Part shown: positions 44,994 through 64,000 of the stretch, piece after piece
Layout: each line of letters begins with the position of its first letter
How positions within the stretch are numbered: position 1 is the first letter of the stretch
DNA from: Octopus sinensis
Lineage: Eukaryota
Reading direction: 5' to 3'
NCBI RefSeq assembly: GCF_006345805.1
Contig: NC_043005.1
Span: 51,026,001-51,090,000, forward strand
Length of the DNA: 64,000 nt
Made by a program: the position numbers and the translations under genes
Notes under the pieces: model-generated
What the model saw: the letters and a program-made list of their open reading frames with translations, nothing else
Told to the model about the DNA's origin: nothing
The model's database searches: none

Positions 44994-45034
<41 letters not shown>

Positions 45035-45046
45035 AGAATCTCGCAA

Positions 45047-45088
<42 letters not shown>

Positions 45089-45687: not shown

Positions 45688-45736
<49 letters not shown>

Positions 45737-45768
45737 TGCATGTATGTAAGAATGCATATATGTATATA

Positions 45769-45815
<47 letters not shown>

Positions 45816-46010
45816 CTATTTATTTATAAATAATGTTCTCTTTTATATATATATTTATATATAATATATAATATATATGTATCGTTAGATAGATAGATAT
45901 ATTCTCATACGTACGTATACATCTACATAATATGTGTATGCTGATGTGTATGTTGTGTGTTGTGTGTGCGTGTGTGTATGTGTGTGTATGTGTGTGTGTG
46001 TATGTGTTTT

Positions 46011-46046
<36 letters not shown>

Positions 46047-46314
46047 TGTATGTGTGTCTATGTGCGCTCGTTGACCTTTTCATTCTGACAGTTGGTTCCA
46101 TTGTGCATTCGTTTCGCTTCCTTAAATATTGGGGTTCAAGCTAAATATTCAAATTATTGTATGAAACTATTGCAACTTGTGCATTTTCCTGATATACATA
46201 CAAACAAGCACACCTTCATACGTACATACATACATACATACATACATACATACATACATACATACATACACATATATAAATATATACATATATTAATGTG
46301 TATGTGTACGTGTG

Positions 46315-46350
<36 letters not shown>

Positions 46351-46473
46351 ATGCATGTGTATATTTATGTATATATATACATACATGTATACATATATTT
46401 ATATATACATATGTGTATGTATGTATATAAGAGTAAATATACTTACACATGCACACACACATACAAACGTGTC

Positions 46474-46506
<33 letters not shown>

Positions 46507-46714
46507 CTATGCCCGTGCTTGTGTGTATGTGTCTGTGTTTGTGCTTATACTAATGTTTATGCAAGCTTATATGTACAGAGAGGGAGAGAAAGAGATAGGC
46601 GGAGAAAGAGAGAGAGAGAGGAATATTAATGGTTCTAGTGGACTTCAGTGTTTCCCTCGCTTTGTTTTTTTTTTATAAGACTCTACAATTGTTTCAAAGT
46701 AATATATGATGATG

Positions 46715-46717
46715 ATG

Positions 46718-46769
<52 letters not shown>

Positions 46770-46840
46770 TAATAATAGTTTCAAATTTTGCACATGAGCA
46801 AGACTTTTGGGCAAGGGGATGAGTCGATTACATCGACCCC

Positions 46841-46896
<56 letters not shown>

Positions 46897-46925
46897 TAAT
46901 AATAATAATATAATAATAATAATTT
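46715..46925. repeat. (AAT)n microsatellite interrupted by a SINE A fragment
   Basis: Directly visible. Confidence 0.93.
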
Positions 46926-47329
46926 GTAGTAGTAGTAGATTATTTTGTTGTTGTTGTTCTTGTTTGTCTCGTGATATTATTAAGTGGAGTATGTGTATTA
47001 CTTCGCCTTTTCTTTCTTTTTTTTTTTATTTTTTCAAGCCAAAGGGTTAACCGAAACCACCTCTCGAGAGAGAAAGAGAAGAAGATGAAAAGAAAAAAAA
47101 ACAAGAAAGAAAGCAGGGAAGAACCGAAATGATTCTTCAAGTATTGAGCTGCTACAGAAAGAGAGTGAATTATAAGCATAATCGAATGTCTGGAGGCCAC
47201 GTTTGAATATTCTGAGATATTGATTGAACGGGGATGATGTCTTTTTGCTTCGTTTTCTTTTCTTTTTTCTTTTTTTTTTTTTAACATGGTGGCTTTTGCA
47301 TGGAACGATAATTCAAATGTGATCGTAAG

Positions 47330-50199
47330 TTAGTTTTTAGAAAGCCGTGATCTTAATTCCTTCTTTAGCAGTTTCATTAAGAACATGATAAAGTCATCAT
47401 CATCATCATAGACACTTTTCAGTTGTTTGATGAATGAATCTATTTCTGAAGGATTAAATTCTTTTTCGATACCTTCACCATCTCCTTGCGCAGAAGTGTC
47501 CTTTTGTTTAGAAATATTCATTGTTATTTTTAGTGGTGGCTTTTCGCCTACTATTTTATAAGAAGCCAGAGGAGATGGCGACTTTGTGCTTTGCGGCTTG
47601 CTATCGTCTGTCTTTGTACTTTCTGCTGATTCATTGCTATCATCATTTCCTAATGTATTTCTCAAGCCAGCCGAGGAATTTGTAATAGTTATGTTGGTCA
47701 TGAAGAGTGATTTCATCATATCAGGTGCATCTTTATCATACTCAGTGAATTTTTCGCCCAAATCATCGGGGTCATCTTTCTTTGACATTTTAGTTGTTAT
47801 GTTCAAATGTATTCCATGCTTATGGTTATGCCTTTTGCTATGGGATTTCGTCTTTGGCGCTTTTTGTTTGATTGAAACGCGATGTTTATTCCCCTTTTTT
47901 GCATGAGTCACCTTAATGGTCACGGATTTCTTTTTCTGCGCTTTCGGCTTCGTTTTTTTACGAGCAAACCAAGTACCTCTTTTATCTTTTCCCATTTCTA
48001 TATGTTTTTTAATATCTGCCATAATCAACTTTTCAGCTCCATTGTCATTATCGTCTTCATCCTGGTCGGAGACTGTGGGCAAGCTTATATCGCCATCAGA
48101 AGTACAGATTAGTTTGGTGCCAGATTTTATTTTAATTGTTTTACATTTATTATCACCATTATTATTGTCACCGTCACTATCCTCCCCTTCATCCTCATCC
48201 TCATCGTCGTCATCTTCATCGTCATTGTCTTCCTCGCCATTTTCATCATCACCATTTTCTTCATCATCACTGTCATCACCATTATCCTCTTCATCATTAT
48301 CACCATTACCATTCTCTTCATCACTATCATCATCCTCATCACCGTTATCGTCATCTCCATTAAAGCTCTCCTCGCCCTCCCCCTCCTCCTCGTTCTCCTC
48401 GCTCTCTTCCGCCTCTTTCCCATTCATTCCTTTGCCATTTTTTATTTTCACGGAAAATTTTATTTTCTTGCCTTTTGATTTCGATTTTCCTGCTTTACCA
48501 TTATGTCCATTTAGTTTCGCTTTTATTTTAATTTTGTGTACTCCGCCGCGAGATTTTTCACCATTTTTGCTATCTTTCACATCCGTGGACTTCGCAGACG
48601 CAGACTTCTGTCCTTGTCTACCATTATTGCGCAAACGAATAGTCACAGTTGTTGCATTTTTCCTTACCTTCAATTCCTTCAGTGCTCCCTCTTCCTCCTC
48701 TTCATCTTCCTCTTGTTCGCTCTCGTCATCGTCTTCTTCCTCTTCATCATCACCATTATCATCATCAATTTCACCACCATCATCATCACCGTTGCCATTC
48801 CCAATTTCATCATCGTCATCATCATCACTATCAGAACCACCAGTATCTTCATTTTTATTACCGTTATAGCCACCAGTATCCTTATTTTTATTACCGTTAC
48901 AGCCATCTTCAAAATTACCATTAACACAATTATTATTACCATTACCATTGCCATTATTCCCATCATCATCGTCATCATCATCTTCCTCGGAATCGCTGTC
49001 ACTGCTATTAGAACCGTTGTTATCTTCTCCTTCTTCATCAACGACACCCATACCTAGCTCTGGTTCTCCTAATTTCATTTGCATCAGGTCGTCTTCATCA
49101 TCATCATCTTCTTCTTCTGTTTCTTCATCACTCTCCTCTTCTCCGCTCTCATTCGCACTTTCAGCCGCCTTCTTTCCTGTTTCTTCCTCTCTCTCCAACG
49201 ATTCTTTACTTTCTTTACTTTCCTCTTCTCCACCATCCTCATCGTCCTCAGAATCGTCATCCTCATTTTCATCTTCTTTGGTAGCTTCGTCGCTTACGAT
49301 TTTACTTCCTGCTTCACTCGACGCTTCAGCACCGCTTTGACTGGCCTTGCTATCCGCGTCCTCACTATCTTCTCCATCATCATCATTACCGAATCCTTGA
49401 GACAAATCACTATCATCAATAAGGAATTTTGATTGTCCTCGACTTTCACGCAAGTTACCAATATCTTTCACATTAATATCCATGAAGTTGTCGCTATGTC
49501 CCTTCGTTATACTACTATGCTCAGTATTAGTCCTAATTCTTTTAGGAATTGGAGTATCAAGCAATGTATCTCTATATGGATCTTCAACGCCTACCGGATC
49601 TGCTTTCGATAAAATACTGCCATATTTAATCTCATCAAGTAGTCCTTTCAAAACTTTATTTCCGTTATCAAACGACTGACTCATATGAAAAACGTTACCA
49701 GGTCCGATATTTTCAAAACTTTTGGTAATATCACTCTTGAACGGTAATGAGAATATTCTTTCTGTAAGTATTTTTCCATTCTCGGTTATGTTCTTAACGT
49801 TCTGTTTACTGTCTAGCCTGTCGTGGGTATCAATATCTGATACCAGGTTGCTATCAGGTCCTATATCTTTTATCATGAAAACCTTAAAGGAATTTTTGCC
49901 GTTGAGATAAGCGTTCTTTTTTTCTATAAGATAGTTGATCTTCTGGTCAAATCTCTCGCCTTCCTCGAAGAGTTTATTCATGGTCCTCATACCAAGTTTG
50001 TAATCGTTTGTCCAGTGTGAAGAGCCGACGTTTGGCGTGAACATCTGTCCGCGATGTGGTTCATAGCTGACCTCGTTTCTGATTGTCGCCTTGGTTTCTA
50101 AGTCATTAAACATGTGAGTTGCTGGAACTCGCGGATGACCCATACTGAACTTGTCGTTTTCAGATATCTCAGATGATGAACTTGAATCGGTTTCGTCGT
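47330..50199 (-). CDS. Terminal coding exon of an Asp/Glu-rich, Lys-block, low-complexity protein (~955 aa in this exon), probably secreted
   Basis: 2.87-kb stop-free frame in AT-rich DNA with mixed synonymous codons (not a microsatellite). T-rich acceptor ttatttatttag at 50200-50212 gives phase 1 (xAC GAC GAA ACC... = DETDSSSSEISENDKFS, then the track's Met at 50143). About 10 N-x-S/T sequons and many S-x-E sites. Confidence 0.9.
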
Positions 50200-51006
50200 C
50201 TAAATAAATAAATAAATAAAATTATTAATAATCATCACTGGTTTAATTTCATATCATTTATAGCAGAAAAGAAAAGCATTGTGATGGGAGAATAGTTAGA
50301 TAGACGTAGAAAATTCTTTTGGGGTACTTAGAAAATTCAACCTCTGCGGTATTTGAACTCAGAACGTAGAGACAGATAAAATACCGCTAAGCATTTTCCC
50401 CGGTCTTCTAACGATTATTGATTTCAAAATTTTGGCACAAGGCTAGCAATTTCGGGGCAGAGGATAAGTATATTACAATGACCCCAATACCCAACTGGTA
50501 CTTATTTTATCGACCCCACAATGATAAAAGGCAAAGTCGACCTCGGCAGAATTTGAACTCAGAACGTGAAGACGGACGAAAGGCTGCTAAGCACTTTGAC
50601 CGACGTGCTAACGATTCTGCCAGCTTACCGGCTTAGTTATTTTATGTGTAACAGATACCTCACTTAAGGTTATCAATTCAAAGCTTAAACTTAGTTTACA
50701 TTATTTGCGCTATTATTTTCACGTCTTTGTTCTTGTGTGGCAGTCTTATTAACTCATATCTCACCCTATGAAATGCCAAGGCCTGCTTCTTGAGTGTTTT
50801 TACTTGAGTTCACGCTGTTGCAAATATTCCCGATTTTCTATCTAAAGAAAGCTTCCCAACTATCTTCCACAAACCCCGGATGCCATGTAAAGAGTCATAG
50901 TGTTATATTCCTTATTATGTTAGATTATTATAACGCCCACTTCGGTATACAGTGTACTTAGTAAAACCAGTAAAGACACGACTATCTCTGACCGCCTGCT
51001 ACGTAC

Positions 51007-51472
51007 ATATTCCTTATTAAGCACTCAAGCTTTTACACAGAGGGGACAGCACAAGGAGAGACAGAACACCACAGTGGGAACAAAAACATGAAAGGAAAGA
51101 AAATGGGGAAAATGTTATTTAATAAATGAAAATGAATGACTACATGAGCTCCACTCTCATGCAGTACCATTTGAACGTTCTTACAGACAGTTTATAATCT
51201 TTATTTCCTTTTCCTTTTTTCCATAAGCATCGTTTTTTTAAAAAGAAATTTTACTTACTCTTGTTTTTTAAGAGTTCATATATGGTTCTAATTCTCTATA
51301 TTCCATCACTGGCGGCAGTTCGTCAAACTCCACCTCAACTCCCGGTAGATCAATATCCCTTCCAAACATTTCCTTTAACCTGTTATACCTCTCTTTATCT
51401 ATAAAAATTGCTTTCACATTTTCCGTGTAAATCTCCGTAGGCAACTTAACCATTATTATGGATTTAAACTTC
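51007..51472 (-). mobile_element. 5'-truncated copy 2 of an ORF1-only L1/Tx1-like element
   Basis: KFKSIIMVKLPTEIYTENVKAIFIDKERY...EFDELPPV is homologous to 54695-54900; 3' UTR is similar to 54415-54690. Confidence 0.75.
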
Positions 51473-51982
51473 GATTTTATCAAGATTTTCCAGTCTTTCC
51501 AGTTCTTTGTTAACCTGGTCTATTCTTGCAAACGGTACTTTCCGTTTTGGCCTAAAGACCGGTATTTAAGACTTTGTTTTACAGCGATCTTAGATTTTGT
51601 TTTTGTACAACAACCCAGTTCTTCCCCCACCAAAAAAAAAACAAAACAAAAAAAAAACATCTGGGAATAATCTTTTTTATATTTTGTTTCAGTTCTTCGG
51701 CTTCATTTGAACCTTTGACTGACTCAACTATATTTCTGCAGAGAACACATACGTGCGTATCCCACAATTCGAACAGTTCCAGCTACTCTGCACCAAATAA
51801 AATAAGTGAATCTTTTAATACAATATATCTTTGCCTTTTTAATTTGAGCACGAAATGTTACATTACATACGAGTTCACTGAAAAATATAATCTTTTTCCC
51901 GGAACACAATGTGCTACCTTTTTAGATTCAATAAACTTCGGCTTACCGATATATTTCCAAGTTTTTTTTTGGGGGGGGGGGG

Positions 51983-52397
51983 GATCTTTTCGGTTTGACC
52001 GGTAGTTTTTCCTAGCGGTGTCATATGAAATTGTCACCCATAATTATGACCCTAGTATCGATCTATTGTATTTCAATCTATTTTAGGGTTAGGGTTAGGG
52101 GTGGAGGGAAGGGTATCTTTTTTTTCTTCACAAATGTAAATAAACCCAATCTGTTTCTTAAACGAGGGACATATTCATACGGCACAGAATGTTGTTTACC
52201 TCAATGGACGTCAGTGATTGGTTGAAATTGCAGAAATTGAAGAAAAAAACAACAAATATCTTACAAACTATAGAATTTTCTCAATAAAGCCAAGAGAAAA
52301 AGATGTTTTATAAACACATTCTACCAGTATATGAAGTTTAAAATTTTTTAGTTACCTAGAAATTATGTTAAAAACTGCCGTTCAAACCGAAAAGATC
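51983..52397. mobile_element. MITE with 27-bp TIRs and internal (TTAGGG)-like repeats, inserted in the Gypsy protease
   Basis: gatcttttcggtttgaccggtagtttt versus aaaactgccgttcaaaccgaaaagatc (2 mismatches); the protease frame continues on both sides. Confidence 0.85.
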
Positions 52398-53150
52398 ATT
52401 TTTTCATTTATAATGGTGATGTCACTACCAGTGTCCAATTTTGTTTTAACACTTGTATTTCTGATTTTCACCTTCATGAATTTCATCATCATTATGCTAC
52501 CAAATATTTTCCATTACATACTATTTATTCCTTTTCCTTTGTTCTGACGTTTTATCATATTCGTTCTACAATGTGTCTTTATATGCCCTATATTTACACA
52601 ACGAAAGCACTCCGCTTTCTTAAATGAACAATTTTTCCTCAGGTGTATACCTCCACATGCAAACCATGGGTTTATTTCCTGATTTTTGTCGTGTTTTTTT
52701 AGAAAACACTTTATCTCTGCTCTATTTCTCACTTGGAAACAATCTTTACGGTCAATTCCCTCAGTGTCGTGTCTTAATCTTACTATCCTTTCACATTTTT
52801 CTGACACTTGCTGTAGGGTTACATCCTGCTTTTGTTACCGCTTTGCGAGAATTCTAGTTCTAACTTCTGCGTCCTTTTCGGCAGTAAGTCCTTGTGTAAA
52901 AATCAAGCATTTGGACATATCTGGTGCTAATTCGTCCAGCTTAAACTTTTCACATTCCCTTTTTACTCTACCAGCAAATATGATGCAGTCCTCGTCGTTG
53001 TTTTCCTCGGTGTTCAAACACTCCCAATGTGTGTTGAACAATGAGCTTTTTTCACTGAATATTTTACACTATATATCTATTGTATCAAGTTTAGGTCCTA
53101 AGGTTTTCTTGGGAATACATAATTACCGCATTGTTCATATTCTGCTACGT

Positions 53151-53934
53151 ATTTCTTTACTACCCACAAAGGGGCTAAACACAGAAGGGACAAACAAGGA
53201 CAGACAAACGGATTAAGTCGATTATATCGACCCCAGTGCGTAACTGGTACTTAATTTATCGACCCCGAAAGGATGAAAGGCAAAGTCGACCTCGGGGGAA
53301 TTTGAACTCAGAACATAAAGACAGACGAAATACCTATTTCTTTACTACCCACAAGGGGCTAAACACAGAAGGACAAACAAGGACAGACACACGTATTAAG
53401 TCGATTATATCGACCCCAGTGCGTAACTGGTACTTAATTTATCGACCCCGAAAGGATGAAAGGCAAAGTCGACCTCGGCGGAATTTGAACTCAGAACGTA
53501 ACGGCAGACGAAATACCTATTTCTTTACTACCCACAAGGGGCTAAACACAGAAGGGACAAACAAGGACAGACAAACGGATTAAGTCGATTATATCGACCC
53601 CAGTGCGTAACTGGTACTTAATTTATCGACCCCGAAAGGATGAAAGGCAAAGTCGACCTCGGGGGAATTTGAACTCAGAACATAAAGACAGACGAAATAC
53701 CTATTTCTTTACTACCCACAAGGGGCTAAACACAGAAGGGACAAACAAGGACAGACACACGTATTAAGTCGATTATATCGACCCCGGTGTGTAACTGGTA
53801 CTTAATTTATCGACCCCGAAAGGCTGAAAGGCAAAGTCGACCTCGGGGGAATTTGAACTCAGAACGTAACGGCAGACGAAATACGGCTACGCATTTCGCC
53901 CGGCGTGCCAACGTTTCTGCCAGCTCGCCGCCGC
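53151..53934 (-). mobile_element. Head-to-tail tetramer of SINE A (units 183-185 bp) inserted in Gypsy gag
   Basis: Unit starts at 53151, 53336, 53519 and 53703; only the last unit retains the 5' head. Confidence 0.92.
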
Positions 53935-54296
53935 AAGTCTTCTCAAGATTAAGCGCGTTTTCATCTCGCTGTCCCAGTATTTACATTCATTCTCGAAGAT
54001 TTGCTCATATCTTTTGTAGTATGCTTCGAAGCTAACTCCTTTTTCAGGTTCGTATTTGAACTCTGTTATGGCGAGAACACTTTTTCTGACTTTCCTGAAG
54101 ACTTCATTAATTACAACACTTGTTGCTGTAATAGTAATTGTTGTTTTTCTTTCAAATTTTGGTGGCTTTGTTGCTTCAGCTGTTGTTCTTACAATTGTAG
54201 CTGCTGCTGTTGTTCTTTCAGCTGCTGTTAATGTTGTTTTTGCAATTCGAGCTGACCGGGCAAAAATTTCTCCATAATTTTACGTGTTTATTAATT

Positions 54297-54308
54297 CCTC
54301 GTCTCCAC
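54297..54308 (-). other. Putative primer-binding site (GTGGAGACGAGG) just after a CA-ending putative LTR
   Basis: Resembles the TGGCGACGAG PBS of this Gypsy group; follows ...TACAACA and precedes gag. Confidence 0.6.
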
Positions 54309-54414
54309 TGTTGTAATCCTTAAAATGTTGGACTGTTGTAATGCCCACTTCGGTATACAGTATACTTAGTAGAACCAGTAAAGCCACGACTATCTCTGAC
54401 CGCCTACCACGTAC

Positions 54415-56324
54415 TCTTTCTTTATTTTGGTACTATGGCCATTACACAGTGGGGACAGCAGAAGGACAGACAAAACACCACAGTGGGGACAAAAAACATA
54501 CAATGAATGAAAATGATGTTATGTAATAATGGAAATGAAATGGCTGCATGAGTCCCACTCCCATGTAGTACCATTTGAACGTTCAATTACACAGCTTAGA
54601 ATCGTTCATTTTTACTTTTGTTTTTTTTTTTCTTTATGATCTTTTTTCTTCCTTTTTTGAAATTTAAACAATTTTACTTATTTTATTTTCCTTTTTAACA
54701 TTTCATTAAGGGTTCAAGATCTTTTAATTCTATCACTGGTGACAATTCATCAAATTCCACCATTACTCCTGGCGGATCAATTCCCCTTCCACACATATTT
54801 TTCAGCCTGCTGTATCTCTCCTTATCGACCACAATGGCCTTCACGTTCTCTGAGTATATTTCTATGAGCAGCTTCACCCTTATAATAGCCTTAAATTTCA
54901 TTATTTTCCACTCAGTTTCTTTATTTTTAGCATATATCACAAAATTCCATCGGTATTTTTTCGCCTTTCTTGTTTGTTTACCCTTTTCTTGCTCTACTCC
55001 TAGTACTTTTTCCTCTTCTACTCTGAATAGTTTCGCCATTTCACCCTCATACAGTTGCTCGCCTAAATCCTTTTCCTCCACTGGTGTAACCAGTGTCTTT
55101 GCTGCTGTCTCCTCCTGAAACTCCTCCTCGAGCTCCTCTTCAAGCTCCTTTTCAATCTCCTTCTCAACCATCTTCTCAGCCTCCTCCCTTCTAACTTCCT
55201 TCACAACCTCTTTCTCTACCCCCTTAATCACTTCTTTCTTTTTTCTTTTTTTTTTCTTTTCCTATCTCTCTGGCGGAGAACTTACTTTTTCACTCCTCTT
55301 TCTCTTTTTGACTACCGTGAATTCCTCCTCTGTTTTTGTCTCCTTTACCTCGACGTGTACCACTTGGTCCACATTCTCCTGATCCACAGTCTGCTCCATC
55401 TGTTGTTCCGCTTCTCTCTGGAGGCACCTCGTCTTCATATGGCCTTTTTCTCCACACAAGTAGCATATGGGAGGCAAACCCTCCACCACCACTCTCAACC
55501 TTACAGCCTCAGGCAGAACTATTTTTTCTGCAATTCTGTTGAGGTCTTCCAAACTCGCTTGTATGACCATCCCTATGCCATATCCCAATAATTCAACCTT
55601 TTGGCTCACGTTGCCTGGAGTATCTTGGCATTCTCCTCCATATTAAACATTATGGCTGCCATCAGCCATGCTTCCTTTATCTCTGGGGGTACTTTGCCAA
55701 CTCTCACCCTGGCAACATGCTTTCCACAGTACGTCGGCAAAAGTATCCATTCTTCCCTCCTTATTGCTTCTGTGGAGAGCTTAATCGCTTCGCCCTCCGT
55801 CGCGAAACGCACCTCCACTGTGCCATACCTCCTTCTACGTGTGATGAACGTGGTCAGTTTCTTGATTTCCTTCAAGCATTCCTCAATATATCTTCAATAG
55901 GTGCTATTTCAATCTTCCTTGTTGATATCTTCAATGTTTTAAAAATCACTGTCCTCTTTGTTAACACTGCTTGTGAGTTCCTCAGGCGGCGTCAATCGCA
56001 ACGTTTTTCCCTCCTTTTTCAATAGTTTCTCACATTCTTTCATCTTTTTCGGCTCCACTTTTGCTTCACGCACCTCCAAAGCTTCAACTTCTATTCCTTT
56101 ATCAGTTGCTGCCGCATAGCTGTGGCCTCTTGCTGGCACTTTCTCCATCTTTCCCACAATGGGGCGAAAACAAACAATTCAACAATAATAGTAACAGCAA
56201 TTTCAACAGTAACAATCAATAATCTTGGGTACACCCACGAGGGGAGACCTTCAACAAATATTTAACAAGGCGACTTGCGTCTGACAGCAATCAGAAAAAG
56301 CGATAAAATTAACTCCGACATGAA
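54415..56324 (-). mobile_element. ORF1-only (HAL1-like) L1/Tx1-type element with a CCHC knuckle and an unrecognised C-terminal domain
   Basis: Frameshifted ORFs 56157-54695: SYAAA, RVRVGKVPP, VVVEGLPPICYLCGEKGHMKTRC; no EN/RT; AATAAA at the 3' end; 24-bp direct repeat on both sides. Confidence 0.75.
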
Positions 56325-57210
56325 TATCTCAAACCGCCTACTACGTACTTTCGTACTTCACGTACTTCTCTTTACTTATAGTGACTATATTTTCATCACA
56401 TGGGAGGGGTGTGCCAGTATTACTAATTCCCTACAACACATAGAATTTCTGAGAAAGTTCATTTATCCCCTTCTGAGATAAACCTTGCAGTTAGTACACC
56501 TGCATTCTGCAGTCAATGAAGCCGTTCAAGAATTTGGACTTGGAGATCTCCATTTCCAGCGACTTCGAGGGCCACCTCCCAGTGGTGTCGGGCGTCAACG
56601 AAGAGCCCTCGACTACAACAAGACGACCCAAATTTTTTTTTTCTAAGGTCTGGGGTCTCCCGCCCCTAAGCCCTAGACCATCACCTAATCACGCTTACCC
56701 GTCGTGTTGCTTAACAACAACAACAACAACAGCAGCAGTCAATGAAATAAGTACTTGCTAAATACTGAGGTTAACTCAAACGCCTCAAACAACTATTCCA
56801 AAGATGTAGCCTTGTAACTATATTGATTTCAAATTTTGGCTCCAGGTCAGCAACTTCGGAGGAGGGGTAAGTCGATTACATCGAACCCAGTGATAAAATG
56901 GTACTTTATTTATCAACCACGAAAGGATGAAAGACAAAGACGATCTCGGCAAAATTTGAAATCAGAACGTAAAGACGGACAAAATGCCGCCAAGCATTTT
57001 GCCTGGCGTGCTAACGATTCGGCCGGCTCGATGACTTTAGGTTTGTAAATGCCTTTATTCTTTTACTTGTTTTCAGTCATTAAACTGGTGCCATGCTGGG
57101 GCACCGCCTAGACACACACACACACATACTTACGACGGATTTCCTTCAGTTTCCATCTATTAAATCCACACACAGTTTTGGTCGGCCCGATGCTCCCAAC
57201 CACATGGTGT

Positions 57211-57426
57211 GGGGTTCAGTCTCACTGCGTGGCACCTTGGGCATGTGTCTTCTACTATAGCTTTGAGCCAACCAAAGCCCTGTGAGTGGAAACCCGTCGT
57301 ATATATATATAATTTTATATATATATATATATATATACGACAGGTTTCCACTCACAGGGCTTTGGTCGGCTCAAAGCTATAGTAGAAGACACATGCCCAA
57401 GGTGCCACGCAGTGAGACTGAACCCC
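57211..57426. repeat. Fold-back duplication of a SINE B fragment centred on (TA)n
   Basis: ~90-bp unique arms with 2 mismatches that share private variants absent from other copies. Confidence 0.9.
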
Positions 57427-57431
57427 AAACC

Positions 57432-57466
<35 letters not shown>

Positions 57467-57467
57467 A

Positions 57468-57503
<36 letters not shown>

Positions 57504-58054
57504 CGGGAGGGAACACGTACGAATACGAATCCAACTGCTTGCTAGAAAGAGATGCTAATGTCTAAAAACTAACATATCATAAAAATAACGCGTCGTACAC
57601 GAGCAAATAAACGAAACAGATTCATGAAACGGTTCAATTACACGTCAATTGATTTCAATATTAAGAAGCAATCTCTTTTTCTATTATCAGTGTAATACAA
57701 CCAGGTGAATGCACATAACCGGGAACAAAAATACATACCTGTGGAACAGAAGAAGCTCCGAACAACATACATACATACATACATTCATATATATATATAT
57801 TTCGAAACACGCTGGAGTTGAACTAGGAACAGCTGATGAAGGGGATTTTTCCTTGTGTAGTTTGTCTTGTACTCCGTTTTTTTCGTTTAGGTCCGTTTCC
57901 ACGTTTGTTTTTACGTCTTCGTTTCTCGTTGAGTTCTACGTCTATTTGTGGTGTCCTGTACTCACGTATATATATTTATATATGCATGTATATATACATG
58001 AAGATGTAGGTACGTACATATATGTATGTATGTATGCATATATTTTATTTATTA

Positions 58055-58085
<31 letters not shown>

Positions 58086-58099
58086 CGAGTAAAACGCCC

Positions 58100-58528
58100 C
58101 CCCCCCCACCGTCCAAAGGGCGGTGCTAAGTTGTCAAACATTTAAACTAAATTTTCTCAAAACAACTTGTCCGACTGTCCCATAGGCCTCCCCTTTGAGA
58201 AACACTGATTTAACCTAAATTTGAGATACCAGCAAAAGAAGAAATAAAGATAGACTTTTTTTCTATTCCAAAGAAAAACGATTTTATTCACACAACGCGT
58301 AGTATCGAGCGCAACAGCTGATGTACTTGCGCGTACAAATGCACGTTCCCGTGGCTTTATCGATCGCATTCTCACCTGGAATCGATTTTTGAAATTTTTT
58401 CAAGACTTATAAACGTCCTGATACCGTCGGTATCTACATATCAATTTTGAGCGCAATCGGATGGAGGATGCCCGAGATCCTAGAAGACACACACACACAG
58501 ACAGACAGAACGATTTTATATAATAGAT
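58100..58528. mobile_element. Possible non-autonomous Helitron/Helentron-like element
   Basis: Ends in cacacagacagacagaacgattttatataatagat, resembling DINE/HINE-type ends; no coding evidence. Confidence 0.4.
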
Positions 58529-59523
58529 ATAGAAATAATTTTATAAGTAGAAGTAGTGAAATAGCAGAAAAGTTACCGGAATTTCTGTATCTACGCTTGA
58601 ATTTATACGTTCGGAGTTCAATCCCCGATGGAGTTCGATAAAGCAAAGTTCAGTATCAATCACATAGAGAGAGATTACGAAATTAATCGATGTTACATAT
58701 GACCTCAAGGTTGTGCCAGAGGCCATGTAGCGGAGGTGGTGGTGGTGGTTAGGGTGGATCTAAGAACCACCTAGGAGATACAACAGAGAAAATACGTTAT
58801 CAGCTTACTAACAGCAGCATCTTGAAATCGCATCCCTGTATAAGTGGCATTTCGTGCATTAATCTCAGAAACACTATTTTCTTTATTTCTCTTTTTTTTT
58901 TATATAGCTGGTAGAACCAGTGGGAGAGACTCGCTCACACACATGGAGAGAGAGGGGGGAGAGGGAGAAAGAACCACACACACACGCACATGAGCAATTA
59001 AAGAGACAGATACAGAGACAGGGCATGTCTGAAAAAAAGCATCGTCATCATCATCATTAACATTTTCGAGCAGATGTGAAGTGGTAAGAATTAAATACAC
59101 CTTTCACAAAGTGCACACTTTTCTCTCCTTTTAATCCGACCTTTTCTCGCTTCTCTCTTTCTTAGTCTTTCTTCCTATCTCTCCCTTCCACTCTCTCTCA
59201 CTCCCTTTCTCTGTCCCTCTCAGCCACTCCTTTTTTTTATTCAGTTTTTCTGTCCTTTATCTCTTAAAACTTTTGAAAGTAGTGATTCCCACAGTATGGC
59301 CACAGTCTATTCTTTTATTTACTTCAGTCATTTCACTGCAGCTATGCTAGAGCGCCGCCTTTAGTCAAGCAAATCGACCCCAGGACTTATTCTTTGTAAG
59401 CCTAGTACTTATTCTATCGGTCTCTTTTGTCGAACCACTAAGTTACGGGGACGTACACACACCAGCATCAGTTGTCAAGGGATGTTGGGGGACAAAGACA
59501 GACATACAAACATATACACACAC

Positions 59524-59556
<33 letters not shown>

Positions 59557-60618
59557 TATATATATGTATATATACGACGGGCTTCTTTCAGTTTCCGTCA
59601 ACCAAATCCACTCAGAAGGCTTTGGTTGGTCAGAGGCTATAGTAAAAGACACTTGCCCAAGGTGCCACGCGGTGGGACTGAACCTGGAACCATGTGGTTT
59701 GTAAGCAAGCTACTTACCACACAGCCACTCCGGATAATTAAATAAAACTATAACGAATAAAGCAGTGATTTTTAAAAATCTTTTTACGCCTTGAAGGGCT
59801 TAGTCGAACAAATGTGTGCATTTATAGTAGTTCACAGATCCATTAATGAGGTAGAATGTTTGCTATGTATCATACCAAGCATCCTGCCTCATTAATAAAT
59901 CTGTGACTTACCATAAATGCACGCATCATATCAACACTATCCTGCAACACGCAACACACAGTAGCGAAATGTGCATATTATAACACTGTAACGAATTATG
60001 TAATCTGATGAGGTTTCTTCTGCAATGTGAGGTGCATTCGATTCCATTATACTGTTCCCCACCCACTAGGGAGCAGTGCAGATGTAAACCAAAACGATCG
60101 TCGTATTAAACAAAGCTTACAGTATATTCTGTCTTCCATACCAATTATTTAAAATATCCTAAAAGTGCAGCGAGGAATTCTTTACGTATATCCTGCGACA
60201 AAATGCAGTATCGCGGATGACGCCTGGTAGGTAGTGAATGTGCTCTCAAAGCACACTAAATAAATAAATACATAAATGTGCCCTTTTAAAGGCTTTAGTC
60301 GAACCTGAGGCTCGACCAAAGCCTAGTGAGTGGATTTGGTAGACGTGGCATGTGTGTGTGTGTATTTGTTTGTGAAGATTATATATATATATATTCAAAA
60401 TGTAACCGCGTGTGTACCGTTGGCGATTTTTTTTCCTCCTTTTTTTCCTCCGTCTTCCCTTCTCTGGATCTTTCCTTTTCCTATGCTTCTGACGAAGAGC
60501 TCCGCTCGAAACGTAAAACCCTCCTTCTTCCCTTCCTTCCTGGGCGTCCAATAATACTATATTTGTTCCACGTCCTCGCGTTGTTGTGTTTTCTCTTTGT
60601 GTTTTCATGTTTGGATTA

Positions 60619-60675
<57 letters not shown>

Positions 60676-60968
60676 GTTGCCGTAGAAAGGGTTGTCCCGA
60701 TTTTAAAGGGTACTAAAATACAAACACATGGAGATGCATGTAAAAAAAACTTTGTATTTCTATGAAGCTCATTAAATGCCATTTCTTTCCATTTCAGGTA
60801 GTACCCACAATGGCCTGCAGTGGAGAGCATCGTGCATTTATTGTTGAAGAGTTTGTTTTTTCTTGTTTCTTCATGTGCTTGATTTTTATTAACCTTTGAA
60901 ATCAGAGCATTTCTGCCGCATTATTTACATTGTTTACATTTGATGGATATTTGTCCTCATCTCTGTTG

Positions 60969-61017
60969 CTAACACAACGTTTCGGCTGATATACCTTCCA
61001 GCCTTCATCAGGTATCT
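60969..61017 (-). ncRNA. Minimal type-I hammerhead-ribozyme-like motif in a PLE 3' repeat
   Basis: GATAC-CTGATGA-A-GGCTG(loop)CAGCC-GAAA-CGTT-GTGTT: core, 5-bp stem II, palindromic stem III, wobble-containing stem I. Confidence 0.65.
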
Positions 61018-61636
61018 TGGGAAAATTTCGAACCTAGGTTCTCATTCCTAGGGTATTTTTGATGTTGTTGTTATTATTATTATTATTGAGTGAGAGAGCA
61101 GTGCATGCCATCAAAGTGACACGGGTAAACAGTACGAAGTCCAGTATACCCATGACTACCCATTTGATTAGGGTACATTAGGTGCATGCCTCACAACCAT
61201 ATGTGCGCGACATGGTGATCTTATATCAAGATAAACAGCACATGACCTTGCAGGTGGGGCCCAGTAAGAATTTTCTTCTGATCGAGTAACCCATCCTGCT
61301 CAATAGGTCCCTGAATAAGGATTGTTTATGAAGGTTGAACAAAACACCCATGTTTCCAGAAGTGAATTATTCAAACCCCAAAAGTTCCTCTCAACACATG
61401 GCTATGATGCTCCCCCACTACTTCTGCTCGTGATCAGAGATGCACATATCGTCAGCCACTAAGGGACATGCTCAACTGGTTAAGGTCAAACAACTGACAA
61501 GCAAATCTGTGGTATTGAGCAGAATATTTGCTGTAGCCCATCTTTTATACCAAGACAAAACAATGTACATGATAACACTTCCAATTAGTTAAGATCAGAA
61601 GCCACGCGAGCCACTGCCTCGTACTGCATCAGGGCA

Positions 61637-61815
<179 letters not shown>

Positions 61816-61829
61816 CAGGTCACTACCTG

Positions 61830-62524
61830 GAATCGAACTCAGAATCTTTTATTTTTCGTATTTTCCAGTGGTGTTCTCTGTCTATTATTTTAACTTCATC
61901 CCACAGGAAGGGGGTCTCTATTTTTTCCATACATGATCAGCTATACCGGATTTATCAATATCTCCTCGTGTCACAGCTTTGCGATGTTCGTCTACCCTTA
62001 TTTTGAGGGGGCGGAATGTTTCGCCTTTGTATAACCTACTACAGCTGTATGGGATGGAGTACACGCAGTTCTTAGGCATATTCTCTACTATTGGTGGTTT
62101 TACTCGAAGGAGATATTTGCGAAGTGTTCTGTTACTCTTGAATACTGTCCTGATGTCATATGGGCTGCATATCATTTGTATCTTTTCGGAGAGGCCTTTC
62201 ACATATGGTAGACAGGCTGTGGACAGTTTATTGGTTTCATCCTCTCTTTTCTTCATAATTGGATTGGATAATATGTTTTGGGGATAGTTGTTGCTTAATA
62301 GATTGTTACTGAGCTTGATCATTTCTTCATGGTAGGTATTACGATCGCTACTTATATTCTTTGCTCGATGTTTTTTGAACGCCCCCGCACTAGATCTTAT
62401 CACTTCCTCCCTGGGGGTGGTACCGACCACCTTGCTAACCACCGATTTAATGTATCTAACGTCCGATCAATCGCACAACTAACGTTTCATCGACTTAACC
62501 AACGGAGGATTTATCACTTACTCA
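61830..62524 (-). mobile_element. PLE RT-thumb/GIY-YIG fragment
   Basis: CLPYVKGLSEKI...CVYSIPYSCSRLYKGETFRPLKIRVDEH...SGIADHVW, then WDEVKIIDREHHWKIRKIK. Confidence 0.88.
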
Positions 62525-62596
62525 TACATGCACACACACACATACACACACACATACACATATATATACGTGTGAGTGTGTGTGTGTATGTGCGTC

Positions 62597-62638
<42 letters not shown>

Positions 62639-62835
62639 TGTATGTGTGTATGTGTCTGTGTGTGTATGGGTCAGTGAGTGATAAATCCTCCATTGATTAA
62701 GACGATGAAACGGTAGTTGTTCGATTGATCGAACTTCAGATCCATTCAAACTGTGGTTAGCAGGATGGTCGGTACCGCCCCCATGGGAACACCAATAAGA
62801 TCTAGTGCGGGTGTTTAAAAATCGATCTGTAAAAA
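62365..62835. repeat. Diverged inverted repeat (~160-bp PLE-derived arms) around a (CA)n-(TA)-(TG)n spacer
   Basis: 62365-62524 resembles the reverse complement of 62672-62835. Confidence 0.85.
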
Positions 62836-63457
62836 CATTGCTTGAACTTGGTTGTCTCCTCAAAACAAGTACAAAGAAGAAAGATAAAATAAAATAAAAT
62901 AAAAACCCGAAAAGTATATTGACAAAGCTGATTATGAAATTCCCAACAAAGATATATATTAAACAAAAGCAGCGTTAACAACGCTAACGACAAATGTATC
63001 AGCAACAACAGAATAAAAATTACATACATACGCGCGCGCGTGTGTGTGTGCGTGAATTCGCGTGGGTTAGTAGTTAGGGTATTAGGCGCTCGATCTAACG
63101 ATCATGAGTTCAGTTCCCGGTAACGCATTGTGTCCTTGAGCAAATCACTTTATTTCACGCTGCTCCAGTCCACTCAGCTGGCAAAAAGGAATAGTGCCTT
63201 GTATTTCAAAGGGCCAGCTCTGTCAAACTCTGTGTTACGCTGAATTTCCCTGAGGACTTACGTTAAGGGTACACATGTCTGATTGGATCAACTAGAAGCC
63301 TCGTCATTGTAGCCGATGGAGTGCCACATATGTGTGTATATATATATATATATCCTGGACAAACACTCCCTCTGGCAGGTGCCGCAAATGTAGCGAAGAC
63401 TGTTCCTGGCTGGTTGTAATGTCATAGTTTCTTGTTGACGTCTTTTTTGTCTTTCCA

Positions 63458-63518
<61 letters not shown>

Positions 63519-63662
63519 ACTCCTTTGTGTTCCCTCTTTTGTTTGTCCAGGATAGGACTACACAGCCACAGCAGGAGATGTATTAGGACATGAAATGAAA
63601 AAACCGGGCTAGACTATTTTATGTGCAACTCCATTGTCTCCCGAGACAAAAAGGATGCCAAC

Positions 63663-63699
<37 letters not shown>

Positions 63700-64000
63700 T
63701 AGCAGAAGTACCAGGCATTGCTCGGGGTTCAAATACTACAACGTTGTTGATACTTAGTAAATTTCCTATGTCATAAAGAACGTTAACGCCAAATTGTGAC
63801 AAAACTGGTCGCCGGGTACCGCTAAATCCAAGGAGTAACTGTTTGATATGATGTCCTGAGAAATGCTTTAATGCGTTCGAAGATGGTTTGACAATCACGA
63901 GTAAAGTAGCACTGAAAAAGGCTTTTTTGTCATTCTCACATCGGTAACAATTTGACAAGAATCCCTGAAAAGGTCTATGTGTTCTCAGGTGGTGTATCAA

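What the first reader, a model, noticed from the sequence alone, without database searches (positions are those of the whole stretch)
47330..50199. Giant acidic/basic block-copolymer exon: candidate secreted mineral-binding or matrix protein
Seen: a single ~955-codon exon. It has a non-repetitive N-terminal third, long D/E/N/G/S tracts (about 49390-48690 and 48420-48160), Lys-rich blocks, and a helical-looking C-terminal cap (IDSFIKQLKSVY...FLMKLLKKELRSRL). There are only four Cys, in two close pairs, about 10 N-glycosylation sequons, and many S-x-E motifs. Established: phase-1 introns commonly follow signal-peptide exons, S-x-E is the Fam20C secretory kinase motif, and D-rich disordered proteins (aspein/Asprich, Starmaker, SIBLINGs) control CaCO3/CaP mineralisation. 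Inference: a lineage-specific Ca-binding matrix protein (statolith, stylet, beak or egg case) in an apparently shell-less cephalopod.
Basis: partly seen in the sequence, partly recalled or inferred. Interest (0 to 1): 0.75.

Follow-up and report, generated by a model that had tools for sequence, protein, structure and literature searches.

The report
Octopus-only secreted acidic/basic block protein
This is the large last coding exon of an Octopus-only gene (already auto-annotated as "dentin sialophosphoprotein-like") for a secreted, disordered protein of alternating strongly acidic and Lys-rich blocks. It probably binds calcium and condenses into some extracellular material, but no evidence here links it to mineral.

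Summary
The window is Octopus sinensis (100% identical to GCA_006345805.1). The exon belongs to RefSeq XP_036361564.1, "dentin sialophosphoprotein-like".

A 109-nt first exon encodes a classical signal peptide (MITTSKVILLSAFLLSVVTQLWC|APIPII). It lies 26.3 kb upstream, outside the window, and joins through a GTGAGT donor and a phase-1 intron to the acceptor at 50200.

O. vulgaris and O. bimaculoides have the same signal exon, splice sites and uninterrupted 963-codon frame, and a 992-aa protein. No relative was found outside Octopus, and there are no Pfam or PDB matches.

Between O. sinensis and O. bimaculoides, residues turn over fast (dN/dS about 0.7). The reading frame, the net charge of each block and nine sequence islands are conserved.

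The N-glycosylation sequons and S-x-E motifs occur at chance frequency, so they are not evidence. Secretion is well supported. Calcium or mineral binding, and the tissue, remain inference.

The O. sinensis RefSeq model splices out an in-frame 717 nt of this exon, whereas the O. bimaculoides models keep it.

The parts
47330..50199 (-). Large terminal coding exon (955 codons plus TAA) of the gene for XP_036361564.1; precursor residues 37-992.
   Evidence: ORF. (identity with the RefSeq model and with GCA_006345805.1). (the same 963-codon open frame in O. vulgaris and O. bimaculoides).
50200..50235 (-). 3' end of intron 1: T-rich tract (ttttatttatttatttattt) plus AG acceptor; phase 1.
   Evidence: The acceptor is conserved in all three species and completes the split codon G|AC (Asp) or G|CC (Ala in O. 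bimaculoides).
50236..64000 (-). The 3' 13.8 kb of the 26,345-nt intron 1, rich in transposon remnants. The signal-peptide exon lies beyond the window, at L001 10001-10109 (equivalent to 'window' 76653-76545).
   Evidence: gag-like and CCHC ORFs. (exon 1, GTGAGT donor, intron length).
49388..50199 (-). Non-repetitive N-terminal region (exon residues 1-270). It starts with an acidic Ser cluster, DDETDSSSSSEISEND. It holds 89% amino-acid identity to O. bimaculoides, with long 100%-conserved islands.
   Evidence: The single-sequence AF2 model was uninformative (pLDDT 37.5).
48683..49387 (-). Acidic tract A1 (exon residues 271-505): D/E/N/G/S-rich, net charge -96. It contains the first Cys pair and a conserved island, DEDDLMQMKLGEPELGMGVVDEEGED.
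   Evidence: (net -96 in O. sinensis against -98 in O. bimaculoides despite 235 against 219 residues).
48398..48682 (-). Lys-rich block B1 (exon residues 506-600), net +20, with amphipathic strand-like motifs TVTIRLR, KIKIKAKL and KIKFSVKIK, each followed by an NG/GK turn.
48152..48397 (-). Acidic tract A2 (exon residues 601-682): D/E/N/G, net -52, with no basic residue.
47768..48151 (-). Conserved Cys loop KCKTIKIKSGTKLIC plus Lys/His-rich block B2 (exon residues 683-810), net +20. Motifs are TIKVTH, RVSIKQK and IHLNITTK.
47333..47767 (-). C-terminal region (exon residues 811-955). The last 40 residues (47452-47333) form two amphipathic helices, IDSFIKQLKSVY and FIMFLMKLLKKELRSRL, that are nearly invariant between species.
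   Evidence: helices, pLDDT 54-60; helical moment 0.66-0.73; conserved island, precursor residues 945-977.
48073..48789 (-). In-frame 717-nt segment (exon residues 470-708) that the O. sinensis RefSeq model removes as a GT-AG intron. It is open and conserved as coding in all three species. The O. vulgaris model uses the same acceptor with a donor at 49053 (981 nt).
47025..47030 (-). The only AATAAA or ATTAAA in the 730 nt after the stop; a candidate polyadenylation signal about 300 nt downstream.
   Evidence: sequence only; use not shown.

Best explanation
The exon encodes almost all of a 992-residue secretory precursor (about 109 kDa, pI 4.4) that was found only in the genus Octopus.

Shown:
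- A 109-nt first exon supplies a classical signal peptide: n-region MITTSK, h-region VILLSAFLLSVV, c-region TQLWC.
- A phase-1 intron of 16-27 kb joins it to this exon.
- The rest of the protein has no other hydrophobic segment.
- It is a charge-segregated polyampholyte: a conserved N-terminal region, an acidic tract (net -96), a Lys block (+20), an acidic tract (-52), a Cys loop plus Lys/His block (+20), and a conserved amphipathic helical C-terminus.
- Selection preserves the reading frame, the net charge of each block, the Lys residues, the strand-like hydrophobic-Lys motifs and the two ends. Most other residues drift.

Inferred:
- The signal peptide is cut after Cys23. This would expose APIPII, a hydrophobic-Pro-hydrophobic N-terminus of the ER-ESCAPE type, which speeds aggregation-prone, calcium-binding cargo out of the ER.
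- The protein is exported.
- Its D/E/N/G tracts bind Ca2+ with high capacity and low affinity.
- Its Lys-rich amphipathic strands pair electrostatically with those tracts, in the same or in neighbouring chains, or with an anionic polysaccharide. The protein would then condense (self-coacervate) in response to Ca2+, pH or ionic strength and become part of an extracellular material.
- Whether that material is mineralised (statolith, stylet) or not (egg stalk, spermatophore, mucus, adhesive) is open. I put the mineral sub-case at about 0.25 in absolute terms.
For: Gene structure and secretion:
- the RefSeq model, exon 1, and the GTGAGT donor in phase 1.
- the signal exon is 105/109 nt identical in O. 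bimaculoides and 109/109 in O. vulgaris, against 87-93% for flanking intron. Donor, acceptor and phase are conserved.
- the identical 992-aa O. bimaculoides protein is on record under both RefSeq (XP_014785381.1) and UniProt (A0A0L8G0Z6) accessions.
- the signal sequence is the only hydrophobic stretch.

Real, selected coding sequence:
- stops are absent only in the coding frame.
- 279 random substitutions leave the frame open in only 0.0002 of 20,000 simulations.
- all 18 indels between O. sinensis and O. bimaculoides are in frame.

Charge architecture is the selected trait:
- SCD z = -10, blob asymmetry z = +17, the same in O. bimaculoides.
- per-block net charge is -7/-7, -96/-98, +20/+18, -52/-62, +20/+22 and -6/-5, despite 81% identity and length changes.
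- Lys is the best-conserved abundant residue (0.90).

Strand-like motifs:
- 9 observed against 1.7 expected, 0 of 5000 shuffles.
- the highest beta-moments in the protein.
- largely conserved between species.
- AF2 places strands there, at low confidence.

Background:
- PMC11557686: secreted calcium-binding proteins have strong ER-ESCAPE motifs that are exposed by signal-peptide cleavage.
- PMC8217771: acidic shell proteins arise independently without sequence similarity, and Lys-rich domains in shell proteins are proposed to anchor polyanions.
Against: - No expression, proteomic or biochemical datum was available. The tissue, secretion, calcium binding and condensation are all untested.
- SignalP could not be run, so the cleavage site (and hence the APIPII N-terminus) rests on the -3/-1 rule alone.
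- dN/dS is about 0.7 overall and reaches 1.0-1.35 in the basic blocks (small counts). The protein is weakly constrained at residue level, which is also what a reproductive, immune or otherwise fast-evolving secreted protein would show.
- The pI of 4.4 is milder than in classical acidic biomineral proteins.
- The S-x-E and sequon arguments are void.
- Both AF2 models are of low confidence.
- The strand-like motif was defined after looking at the sequence.
Confidence: 0.5

Rival explanations
1. One reading: a calcium-carbonate or phosphate biomineral matrix protein (statolith, stylet, beak or egg case) that nucleates or inhibits crystal growth through its Asp-rich tracts. This is a sub-case of the best explanation.
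For: - Signal peptide.
- Asp+Glu 26% with long D/E/N/G tracts.
- Lineage restriction and fast evolution, as is typical of shell matrix proteins (PMC8217771).
- Lys-rich domains also occur in shell matrix proteins.
- G-x-N / NG-rich stretches (11 G-x-N, 28 NG) recall the nacrein repeat (from my own knowledge).
Against: - No link to any mineralised tissue.
- pI 4.4 rather than below 3.5.
- S-x-E motifs are not enriched.
- Octopus has very little mineral (statoliths only; stylets are largely chitinous, from my own knowledge).
- No paper mentions the accessions.
Confidence: 0.25
2. A luminal protein of the secretory pathway rather than a matrix component. It would act as a granin-like, HRC-like or calsequestrin-like high-capacity Ca2+ buffer and cargo condenser in secretory granules, sorted by its conserved C-terminal amphipathic helix.
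For: - Signal peptide, acidic pI, disorder and few Cys arranged in short loops.
- A His cluster, KSHSKRHNHKHGIH.
- Five dibasic sites.
- A near-invariant charged amphipathic C-terminal helix with a hydrophobic face. This is the type of element reported to sort convertases and CPE to granules (from my own knowledge).
Against: - No Granin or Calsequestrin Pfam match even at E<=10.
- Two of the three KR sites are KK in O. bimaculoides.
- No KDEL-type ER retention signal; the C-terminus is LSKN.
- At 992 residues it is larger than known granins.
Confidence: 0.18
3. A polyprotein precursor in which the acidic tracts are neutralising pro-regions, and the Lys-rich amphipathic segments are released by proteolysis as cationic (antimicrobial or toxin-like) peptides.
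For: - Alternation of anionic and strongly cationic amphipathic segments behind a signal peptide.
- Fast evolution.
- Dibasic sites flank B2.
Against: - The cationic blocks are not repeated copies of one peptide.
- They are not consistently bracketed by KR sites or Gly-amidation signals.
- The acidic mass far exceeds what is needed to neutralise them (net -148 against +40).
- The best-conserved parts are the ends and the Cys loop.
Confidence: 0.07
4. A nuclear or nucleolar acidic/basic block protein (nucleolin/NOLC1-like histone or rRNA chaperone), with the signal-peptide exon wrongly joined by gene prediction. This was my own first hypothesis.
For: - D/E tracts alternating with K blocks.
- NLS-like clusters KRIR and RKKTKPKAQKKK.
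- 30 CK2-type S/T-x-x-D/E sites.
- The O. vulgaris model lacks the signal exon.
Against: - The signal exon, its GTGAGT donor and its phase-1 compatibility are conserved in three species.
- The exon is more conserved than its flanks.
- RefSeq models in two species join the two exons, and the same 992-aa protein is in UniProt.
- The signal exon is present, 100% identical, in the O. vulgaris genome that its annotation missed.
- CK2-type sites are below shuffle expectation (30 against 33-36).
- No nuclear-protein Pfam domain.
Confidence: 0.04
5. A young, barely functional orphan: a low-complexity sequence that expanded by slippage, is transcribed, and drifts almost neutrally.
For: - dN/dS 0.70 overall and about 1 in several regions.
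- No homologue outside Octopus.
- A recent in-frame 33-nt duplication.
- A transposon-rich setting.
Against: - Frame retention is very unlikely under neutrality (0.0002).
- All 18 indels are in frame, including those outside repeats.
- Block charges are conserved.
- There are 25-86-residue islands at >=24/25 identity.
- N-terminal dN (0.049) is below intron divergence of 7-13%.
Confidence: 0.06

Closest known systems
Molluscan acidic shell-matrix proteins (Aspein, Asprich, MSP-1/MSP-2)
   Same: - A signal peptide followed by long Asp/Glu-rich low-complexity tracts.
- Lineage-restricted, fast-evolving, and without sequence similarity between clades (PMC8217771).
- From my own recollection, MSP-1 also alternates Asp-rich with basic domains.
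   Different: - No detectable homology.
- pI 4.4 against below 3.5.
- Asp is 14.6% of residues here, against about 60% in Aspein.
- Large conserved non-repetitive N- and C-terminal regions.
- The host has no shell, and presence in mineral is untested.
Vertebrate dentin sialophosphoprotein / SIBLING family (the RefSeq name)
   Same: - Secreted, acidic, disordered.
- A large last exon.
- A predicted hydrophobic-Pro-hydrophobic mature N-terminus (API here; IPV in DSPP, from my own knowledge of Yin et al. 2018).
   Different: - No Pfam match to DMP1, osteopontin or BSP.
- No RGD.
- Only 2 DSS/SSD triplets, against hundreds in DPP.
- The tracts are D/E/N/G, not phosphoserine-based.
- The name reflects composition, not ancestry.
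Starmaker / OMM-64 otolith matrix proteins
   Same: Secreted, highly acidic, intrinsically disordered proteins in the organ analogous to the statocyst. The class is defined by composition.
   Different: - No homology.
- Starmaker depends on heavy phosphorylation, whereas S-x-E sites are not enriched here.
- No evidence of statocyst expression.
Granins, histidine-rich Ca-binding protein and calsequestrin (luminal high-capacity Ca2+ binders)
   Same: - Signal peptide, pI 4-5, disorder.
- Short disulfide-loop potential.
- Dibasic sites and a His cluster.
- A condensation-based mechanism.
   Different: - No Granin or Calsequestrin Pfam match.
- Much longer Lys-rich blocks.
- No ER-retention signal.
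Nucleolar D/E-tract plus K-block proteins (nucleolin, NOLC1) and synthetic or natural complex coacervates (e.g. sandcastle-worm cement)
   Same: The same polymer physics: segregated opposite charges in one chain or in paired chains drive condensation. Blockiness here is z = -10 / +17 against shuffles.
   Different: - Different compartment: a signal peptide is present.
- No shared domains.
- Here both charge types sit in a single secreted chain, with amphipathic strand-like Lys motifs.

Membership tests
Secretory (signal-peptide) proteins | An N-terminal n/h/c tripartite signal with small residues at -1 and -3. | tested here: met
   MITTSK / VILLSAFLLSVV / TQLWC|AP. The 9-residue Kyte-Doolittle maximum is 3.08. 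Position -1 is Cys and -3 is Leu, and Pro at +1 excludes the next site. This was judged by inspection; SignalP was not available.
Secretory (signal-peptide) proteins | No further transmembrane segment or ER-retention signal (that is, soluble and exported). | tested here: met
   The only 19-residue window with Kyte-Doolittle above 1.2 is the N-terminal signal. The C-terminus is LSKN, not K/HDEL.
Secretory (signal-peptide) proteins | A transcript really joins the signal exon to this exon. | tested here: inconclusive
   RefSeq models in two species join the two exons, and the same 992-aa O. bimaculoides protein is also in UniProt. Donor, acceptor and phase are conserved in three species. No reads could be examined.
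SIBLING / dentin sialophosphoprotein | Sequence homology (Pfam DMP1, Osteopontin, BSP_II). | tested here: not met
   No such hit at E<=10 for the exon product or at E<=0.01 for the O. bimaculoides protein.
SIBLING / dentin sialophosphoprotein | An RGD integrin-binding motif. | tested here: not met
   RGD is absent.
SIBLING / dentin sialophosphoprotein | Long (DSS)n phosphoserine repeats. | tested here: not met
   There are 2 DSS/SSD triplets and the longest Ser run is 5.
Molluscan acidic shell-matrix proteins (Aspein/Asprich/MSP-1 class) | Signal peptide and Asp+Glu above 20%. | tested here: met
   Asp+Glu is 26.3% and a signal peptide is present. The criterion comes from PMC8217771.
Molluscan acidic shell-matrix proteins (Aspein/Asprich/MSP-1 class) | Theoretical pI below 3.5. 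| tested here: not met
   pI is 4.40-4.41.
Molluscan acidic shell-matrix proteins (Aspein/Asprich/MSP-1 class) | Occluded in a biomineral, or expressed by mineralising epithelium. | not testable with these tools
   No expression or proteome data are reachable, and no paper cites the accessions.
Granins | Granin Pfam signature (PF01271). | tested here: not met
   No hit at E<=10.
Granins | Multiple conserved dibasic processing sites. | tested here: inconclusive
   There are five KR/RK sites. Of the three KR sites, one stays KR and two become KK in O. bimaculoides.
Nucleolar acidic/basic block proteins (nucleolin, NOLC1, nucleoplasmin) | Nucleo-cytoplasmic synthesis (no signal peptide) and RRM, SRP40 or nucleoplasmin domains. 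| tested here: not met
   A signal peptide is present and there are no Pfam domains.
SURF4 / ER-ESCAPE cargo | A hydrophobic-Pro-hydrophobic tripeptide at the mature N-terminus. | tested here: inconclusive
   The predicted mature N-terminus is A-P-I, conserved in all three species. This depends on cleavage after Cys23, which is only inferred. The motif definition is from my own knowledge of Yin et al. 2018, with supporting context in PMC11557686.
Fam20C substrates | Enrichment or conservation of S-x-E. | tested here: not met
   15 observed against 10.6 expected, p about 0.08. 10 of 15 are conserved, against about 0.61 expected from single-residue conservation. The sites exist but carry no signal.

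The most novel reading that the evidence does not exclude
This may be a genus-restricted, possibly de novo-derived, single-chain natural complex coacervate. Selection would act on charge per block, on Lys-faced amphipathic beta-strands and on two terminal handles rather than on sequence. In-frame alternative splicing ('exitrons' of 717 or 981 nt sharing one acceptor) would tune the acid-to-base ratio, and hence the Ca2+ or pH set-point at which the secreted protein condenses into an octopus-specific material such as statolith matrix, egg-stalk cement or sucker/spermatophore adhesive.
Probability: 0.12. Interest if true: 0.7.

Novelty: new member of a known kind. Interest (0 to 1): 0.4.

Why it matters
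If the mechanism holds, this would be a clean natural example of a secreted protein whose selected trait is its charge pattern rather than its sequence: the net charge of each block is held within a few units while about 19% of residues and 48 codons of indels changed. That makes it useful for testing polyampholyte and coacervate theory, and for bio-inspired materials. It would also add an orphan gene to the short list of candidates for how a 'shell-less' cephalopod handles calcium or builds its extracellular structures.

On the practical side, the work corrects public annotation in three ways:
- The O. vulgaris model (CAI9729108.1) lacks the signal exon that its genome carries intact.
- The O. 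sinensis model may omit 239 coding residues.
- The name 'dentin sialophosphoprotein-like' reflects composition only.

Tried and rejected
1. Word-index homologue searches with the N-terminal 271 residues and the C-terminal 273 residues returned nothing. These were false negatives. The exhaustive search with the same N-terminal piece found P0001, and the word-index search with the whole P0001 found the three Octopus proteins. I therefore do not use as evidence of absence.
2. The exact-product look-up of the 937-aa ATG-to-stop ORF found nothing, because the real product starts in another exon.
3. The nuclear/nucleolar hypothesis (acidic/basic blocks, NLS-like clusters) was my first reading. I dropped it once the conserved signal exon was found.
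4. An ab initio scan for a signal-peptide first exon in phase 1 found only translated TG/TA microsatellites inside the window. On L001 it was swamped by the same artefact and crashed on N runs in the other loci. It was uninformative; the real exon lies outside the window.
5. Single-sequence AlphaFold2 of the N-terminal third (pLDDT 37.5) and of residues 500-955 (pLDDT 43.9) was too weak to justify any fold search, so none was run.
6. These all returned nothing: Pfam, PDB sequence and profile searches and Rfam on the window.
7. Literature searches by accession and by name found no paper on this gene. A search for cephalopod statolith matrix proteomes listed no study of octopus statolith or stylet matrix among its top 15 of 173 hits.
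8. N-glycosylation sequons and S-x-E motifs as evidence for the secretory pathway were rejected after shuffling and cross-species checks.
9. A Pfam scan of the odd N-terminus of the O. vulgaris model gave no hit. I can say it is unrelated and lacks a signal peptide, but not what it is.
Full report
**1. The observation**

On the minus strand the frame is open from 50197 to 47333 (955 codons) and ends in TAA at 47332-47330. The first ATG is at 50143. The 19 codons between the acceptor and the first ATG (DDETDSSSSSEISENDKFS) look like the rest of the protein, and the frame opens right at the T-rich tract.

The stop-to-stop frame of 963 codons is 2.5 times longer than anything else in the window. 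The next longest is a 376-codon reverse-transcriptase frame. In the non-repetitive N-terminal 270 and C-terminal 265 codons, the coding frame has no stops, while the other five frames have 9-39 and 3-35.

- D 139, E 112, K 105, S 91, G 88, N 81.
- Cys at exon residues 424/433 and 685/698.
- 10 sequons and 15 S-x-E motifs.

The block layout is real and strongly non-random. Sequence charge decoration is 10 SD below shuffles, and blob charge asymmetry is 17 SD above them.

Two listed features are not above chance. Ten sequons compare with 9.6-11.2 expected from composition, and 15 S-x-E with 10.6 expected (p about 0.08).

**2. What the locus is**

An exhaustive phmmer search of the N-terminal 271 residues against 1.84 billion representatives gave exactly one hit. 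It is XP_036361564.1 / A0A7E6F1J5, "dentin sialophosphoprotein-like [Octopus sinensis]", 753 aa.

Its locus is GCA_006345805.1 CM016867.1, fetched as L001. It is identical to the window over all 26,671 shared bases, with window coordinate = 86654 minus L001 position. The window is therefore O. sinensis, and the gene is already in public annotation.

The model starts with a 109-nt exon at L001 10001-10109. That position is 12.5 kb beyond the end of the window. It encodes MITTSKVILLSAFLLSVVTQLWCAPIPIISIGNKPH plus one base, followed by GTGAGT. A 26,345-nt phase-1 intron then leads to the acceptor at 50200. The split codon G|AC gives Asp.

The N-terminus is a textbook signal peptide:
- One Lys in the n-region.
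- A 12-16-residue h-region (9-residue Kyte-Doolittle maximum 3.08).
- A polar c-region, TQLWC.
- By the -3/-1 rule, cleavage after Cys23. The next position is excluded by Pro at +1.

No other hydrophobic segment exists in the protein. There is no KDEL-type signal and no RGD.

**3. Orthologues**

Searching with the whole model found three proteins and nothing else at E<=1e-5:
- The query itself.
- CAI9729108.1 from O. vulgaris (773 aa).
- XP_014785381.1 / A0A0L8G0Z6 from O. bimaculoides (992 aa).

I fetched both loci. All three genomes share these features:
- The signal exon: 109/109 nt identical in O. vulgaris and 105/109 in O. bimaculoides.
- The GTGAGT donor and the TTTATTTAG acceptor.
- A long phase-1 intron of 26.3, 27.1 and 16.1 kb respectively.
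- One uninterrupted 963-codon frame.
- A conceptual product of exactly 992 aa.

The O. bimaculoides models encode the full 992 aa.

The O. sinensis RefSeq model removes an in-frame 717 nt (48789-48073; donor AACG|GTGATG, acceptor CCCACAG|TC). The O. vulgaris model removes 981 nt using the same acceptor. The removed segment is open in all three species. It is conserved as protein and contains three of the Lys-strand motifs. It is therefore coding in at least some transcripts. Whether it is also alternatively spliced cannot be decided here.

The O. vulgaris model has an unrelated 144-residue N-terminus without a signal peptide, taken from 21 kb further upstream. Yet the true signal exon sits intact in that genome at L003 31094-31201. 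I read this as a mis-annotation.

**4. Selection**

Comparing O. sinensis with O. bimaculoides:
- Amino-acid identity is 81%.
- Nei-Gojobori dN is 0.095 and dS is 0.136, giving dN/dS 0.70.
- Regional values run from 0.35 to 1.35, with small counts.
- Flanking non-coding DNA is 87-93% identical.

Residue-level constraint is therefore weak. Even so:
- Placing the observed 279 substitutions at random keeps the frame open in only 0.0002 of 20,000 simulations.
- All 18 indels are in frame, 24 codons each way.
- Net charge per block is nearly unchanged: N-terminus -7/-7, A1 -96/-98 (235 against 219 residues), B1 +20/+18, A2 -52/-62, B2 +20/+22, C-terminus -6/-5.
- Lys is the best-conserved abundant residue, at 0.90.
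- Nine islands of 25-86 residues are at least 24/25 identical. They include the signal peptide, precursor residues 77-162, the Cys loop KCKTIKIKSGTKLICTSDGDISLPTVSD, and the C-terminal cap EGIEKEFNPSEIDSFIKQLKSVYDDDDDFIMFL.

S-x-E sites (10/15) and sequons (8/10) are conserved only at about the rate expected from single-residue conservation.

**5.

The Lys blocks carry an alternating hydrophobic/polar-basic pattern: TVTIRLR, KIKIKAKL, KIKFSVKIK, TIKIKSGTKLIC, TIKVTH, RVSIKQK, IHLNITTK, NITITN and LKITMNIS. These are often followed by NG or GK turns.
- The pattern occurs 9 times against 1.7 expected, in 0 of 5000 shuffles.
- These segments have the highest beta-moments in the protein.
- They are largely conserved in O. 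bimaculoides.
- AF2 draws strands there and two helices at the C-terminus, all at low confidence.

The motif was defined after looking at the sequence, so the shuffle result overstates its significance somewhat.

**6. Mechanism**

What is shown is a secretory precursor that is soluble and strongly charge-segregated, with its charge pattern under selection.

What is inferred is the following chain:
- Cleavage after Cys23 exposes APIPII. This is a hydrophobic-Pro-hydrophobic N-terminus like the ER-ESCAPE motif through which SURF4 hurries aggregation-prone, calcium-binding cargo out of the ER. The motif definition is from my own knowledge of Yin et al. 2018. PMC11557686 shows that such motifs are exposed by signal-peptide cleavage and are stronger in calcium-binding secreted proteins.
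- The D/E/N/G tracts bind Ca2+ with low affinity and high capacity.
- The Lys strands pair with the acidic tracts or with anionic polysaccharide, so the protein condenses outside the cell.

The target material is unknown.

**7. Comparison with known families**

The RefSeq name is compositional. There is no Pfam match of any kind, no RGD and no DSS repeats.

Against the class of molluscan acidic shell proteins, this protein meets the signal-peptide and Asp+Glu>20% criteria but not pI<3.5 (criteria from PMC8217771). Occlusion in mineral is untestable here. Granin and calsequestrin signatures are absent. Nuclear acidic/basic proteins share the polymer physics but not the compartment.

It is best filed as a new, orphan member of the composition-defined class of secreted acidic disordered proteins. 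Its unusual features are an acid/base block architecture and conserved terminal regions.

**8. Verdict**

The 'mineral-binding matrix protein' part remains one plausible sub-case among several. Two of the arguments offered for it, the sequons and the S-x-E motifs, are void.

The gene is already annotated but uncharacterised, and no paper mentions it. Interest is moderate.

Noticed in passing
window 48073-48789 and 48073-49053 (minus strand): Two annotation pipelines remove different in-frame pieces (717 nt in the O. sinensis RefSeq model, 981 nt in the O. vulgaris model). Both use the same weak-looking acceptor, CCCACAG|TC. The O. bimaculoides models keep everything. This could be exitron-type alternative splicing that changes the acid-to-base ratio, or it could be a prediction artefact.
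   Followed up: partly
L001, L002 and L003 coding sequences: The conceptual protein is exactly 992 aa in all three species. Yet O. sinensis and O. bimaculoides differ by 18 indels that add 24 codons and remove 24 codons. This may be coincidence or a length constraint.
   Followed up: no
L003 10001-10432 against L003 31094-31201: The O. vulgaris model CAI9729108.1 starts with an unrelated 144-residue N-terminus that has no Pfam hit and no signal peptide. The true signal-peptide exon, 109/109 nt identical to O. sinensis and with the same GTGAGT donor, lies unannotated 27 kb upstream of the big exon. This is a likely mis-annotation.
   Followed up: partly
window 48837-48905: A 33-nt tandem duplication (TRF 2.1 copies, 91% match) encodes NGNKNKDTGGY/NGNKNEDTGGS. 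It is present in O. sinensis and O. vulgaris but is single-copy in O. bimaculoides, so it is a recent in-frame expansion inside acidic tract A1.
   Followed up: partly
window 51268-51483 and 54695-55231 (minus); 55262-55609 and 52514-52807 (minus): Inside intron 1, two ORFs share a roughly 65-residue C-terminal segment (KFK.II.VKL..EIY.ENVKAI..DKERY.RLK.M.GR.ID.PGV.VEFDEL.PV). The neighbouring ORFs carry CCHC zinc knuckles (Pfam zf-CCHC, E 0.0011). These look like remnants of a gag-bearing retroelement in two diverged copies.
   Followed up: partly
window 53236-54035 (+); also 50418-50636, 56836-57048 and L001 19879-20226: A short unit whose translation reads ..NWYLIYRPRKDERQSRPRGNLNSE.. recurs four times in tandem and again elsewhere in the intron. 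It is probably a SINE-like or satellite repeat family.
   Followed up: no
window 40941-42546 (+); L001 13651-15128 (-): Reverse-transcriptase ORFs (Pfam RVT_1, E 6.5e-23 and 1.9e-14) lie downstream of the gene and inside intron 1. GC content rises to 46-49% across 38-44 kb, against about 38% elsewhere in the window.
   Followed up: partly
window 45000-46930: About 2 kb of nearly continuous TA, TG, ATAC and ATA/TAA microsatellite lies 0.4-2.3 kb downstream of the stop codon. It produces many spurious Cys/Tyr/Ile-rich ORFs on both strands.
   Followed up: no
tool behaviour: The word-index protein search missed a 100%-identical database protein when queried with 271- and 273-residue pieces. It found that protein when queried with the whole protein. 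Negative results from partial queries should not be read as absence.
   Followed up: yes
window 5682-6167 (+): A 161-residue ORF has only a weak, sub-threshold match to a C2H2-type zinc-finger family (Pfam zf-C2H2_12, E 0.009). It may be a transposase-derived fragment and is unrelated to the finding.
   Followed up: no
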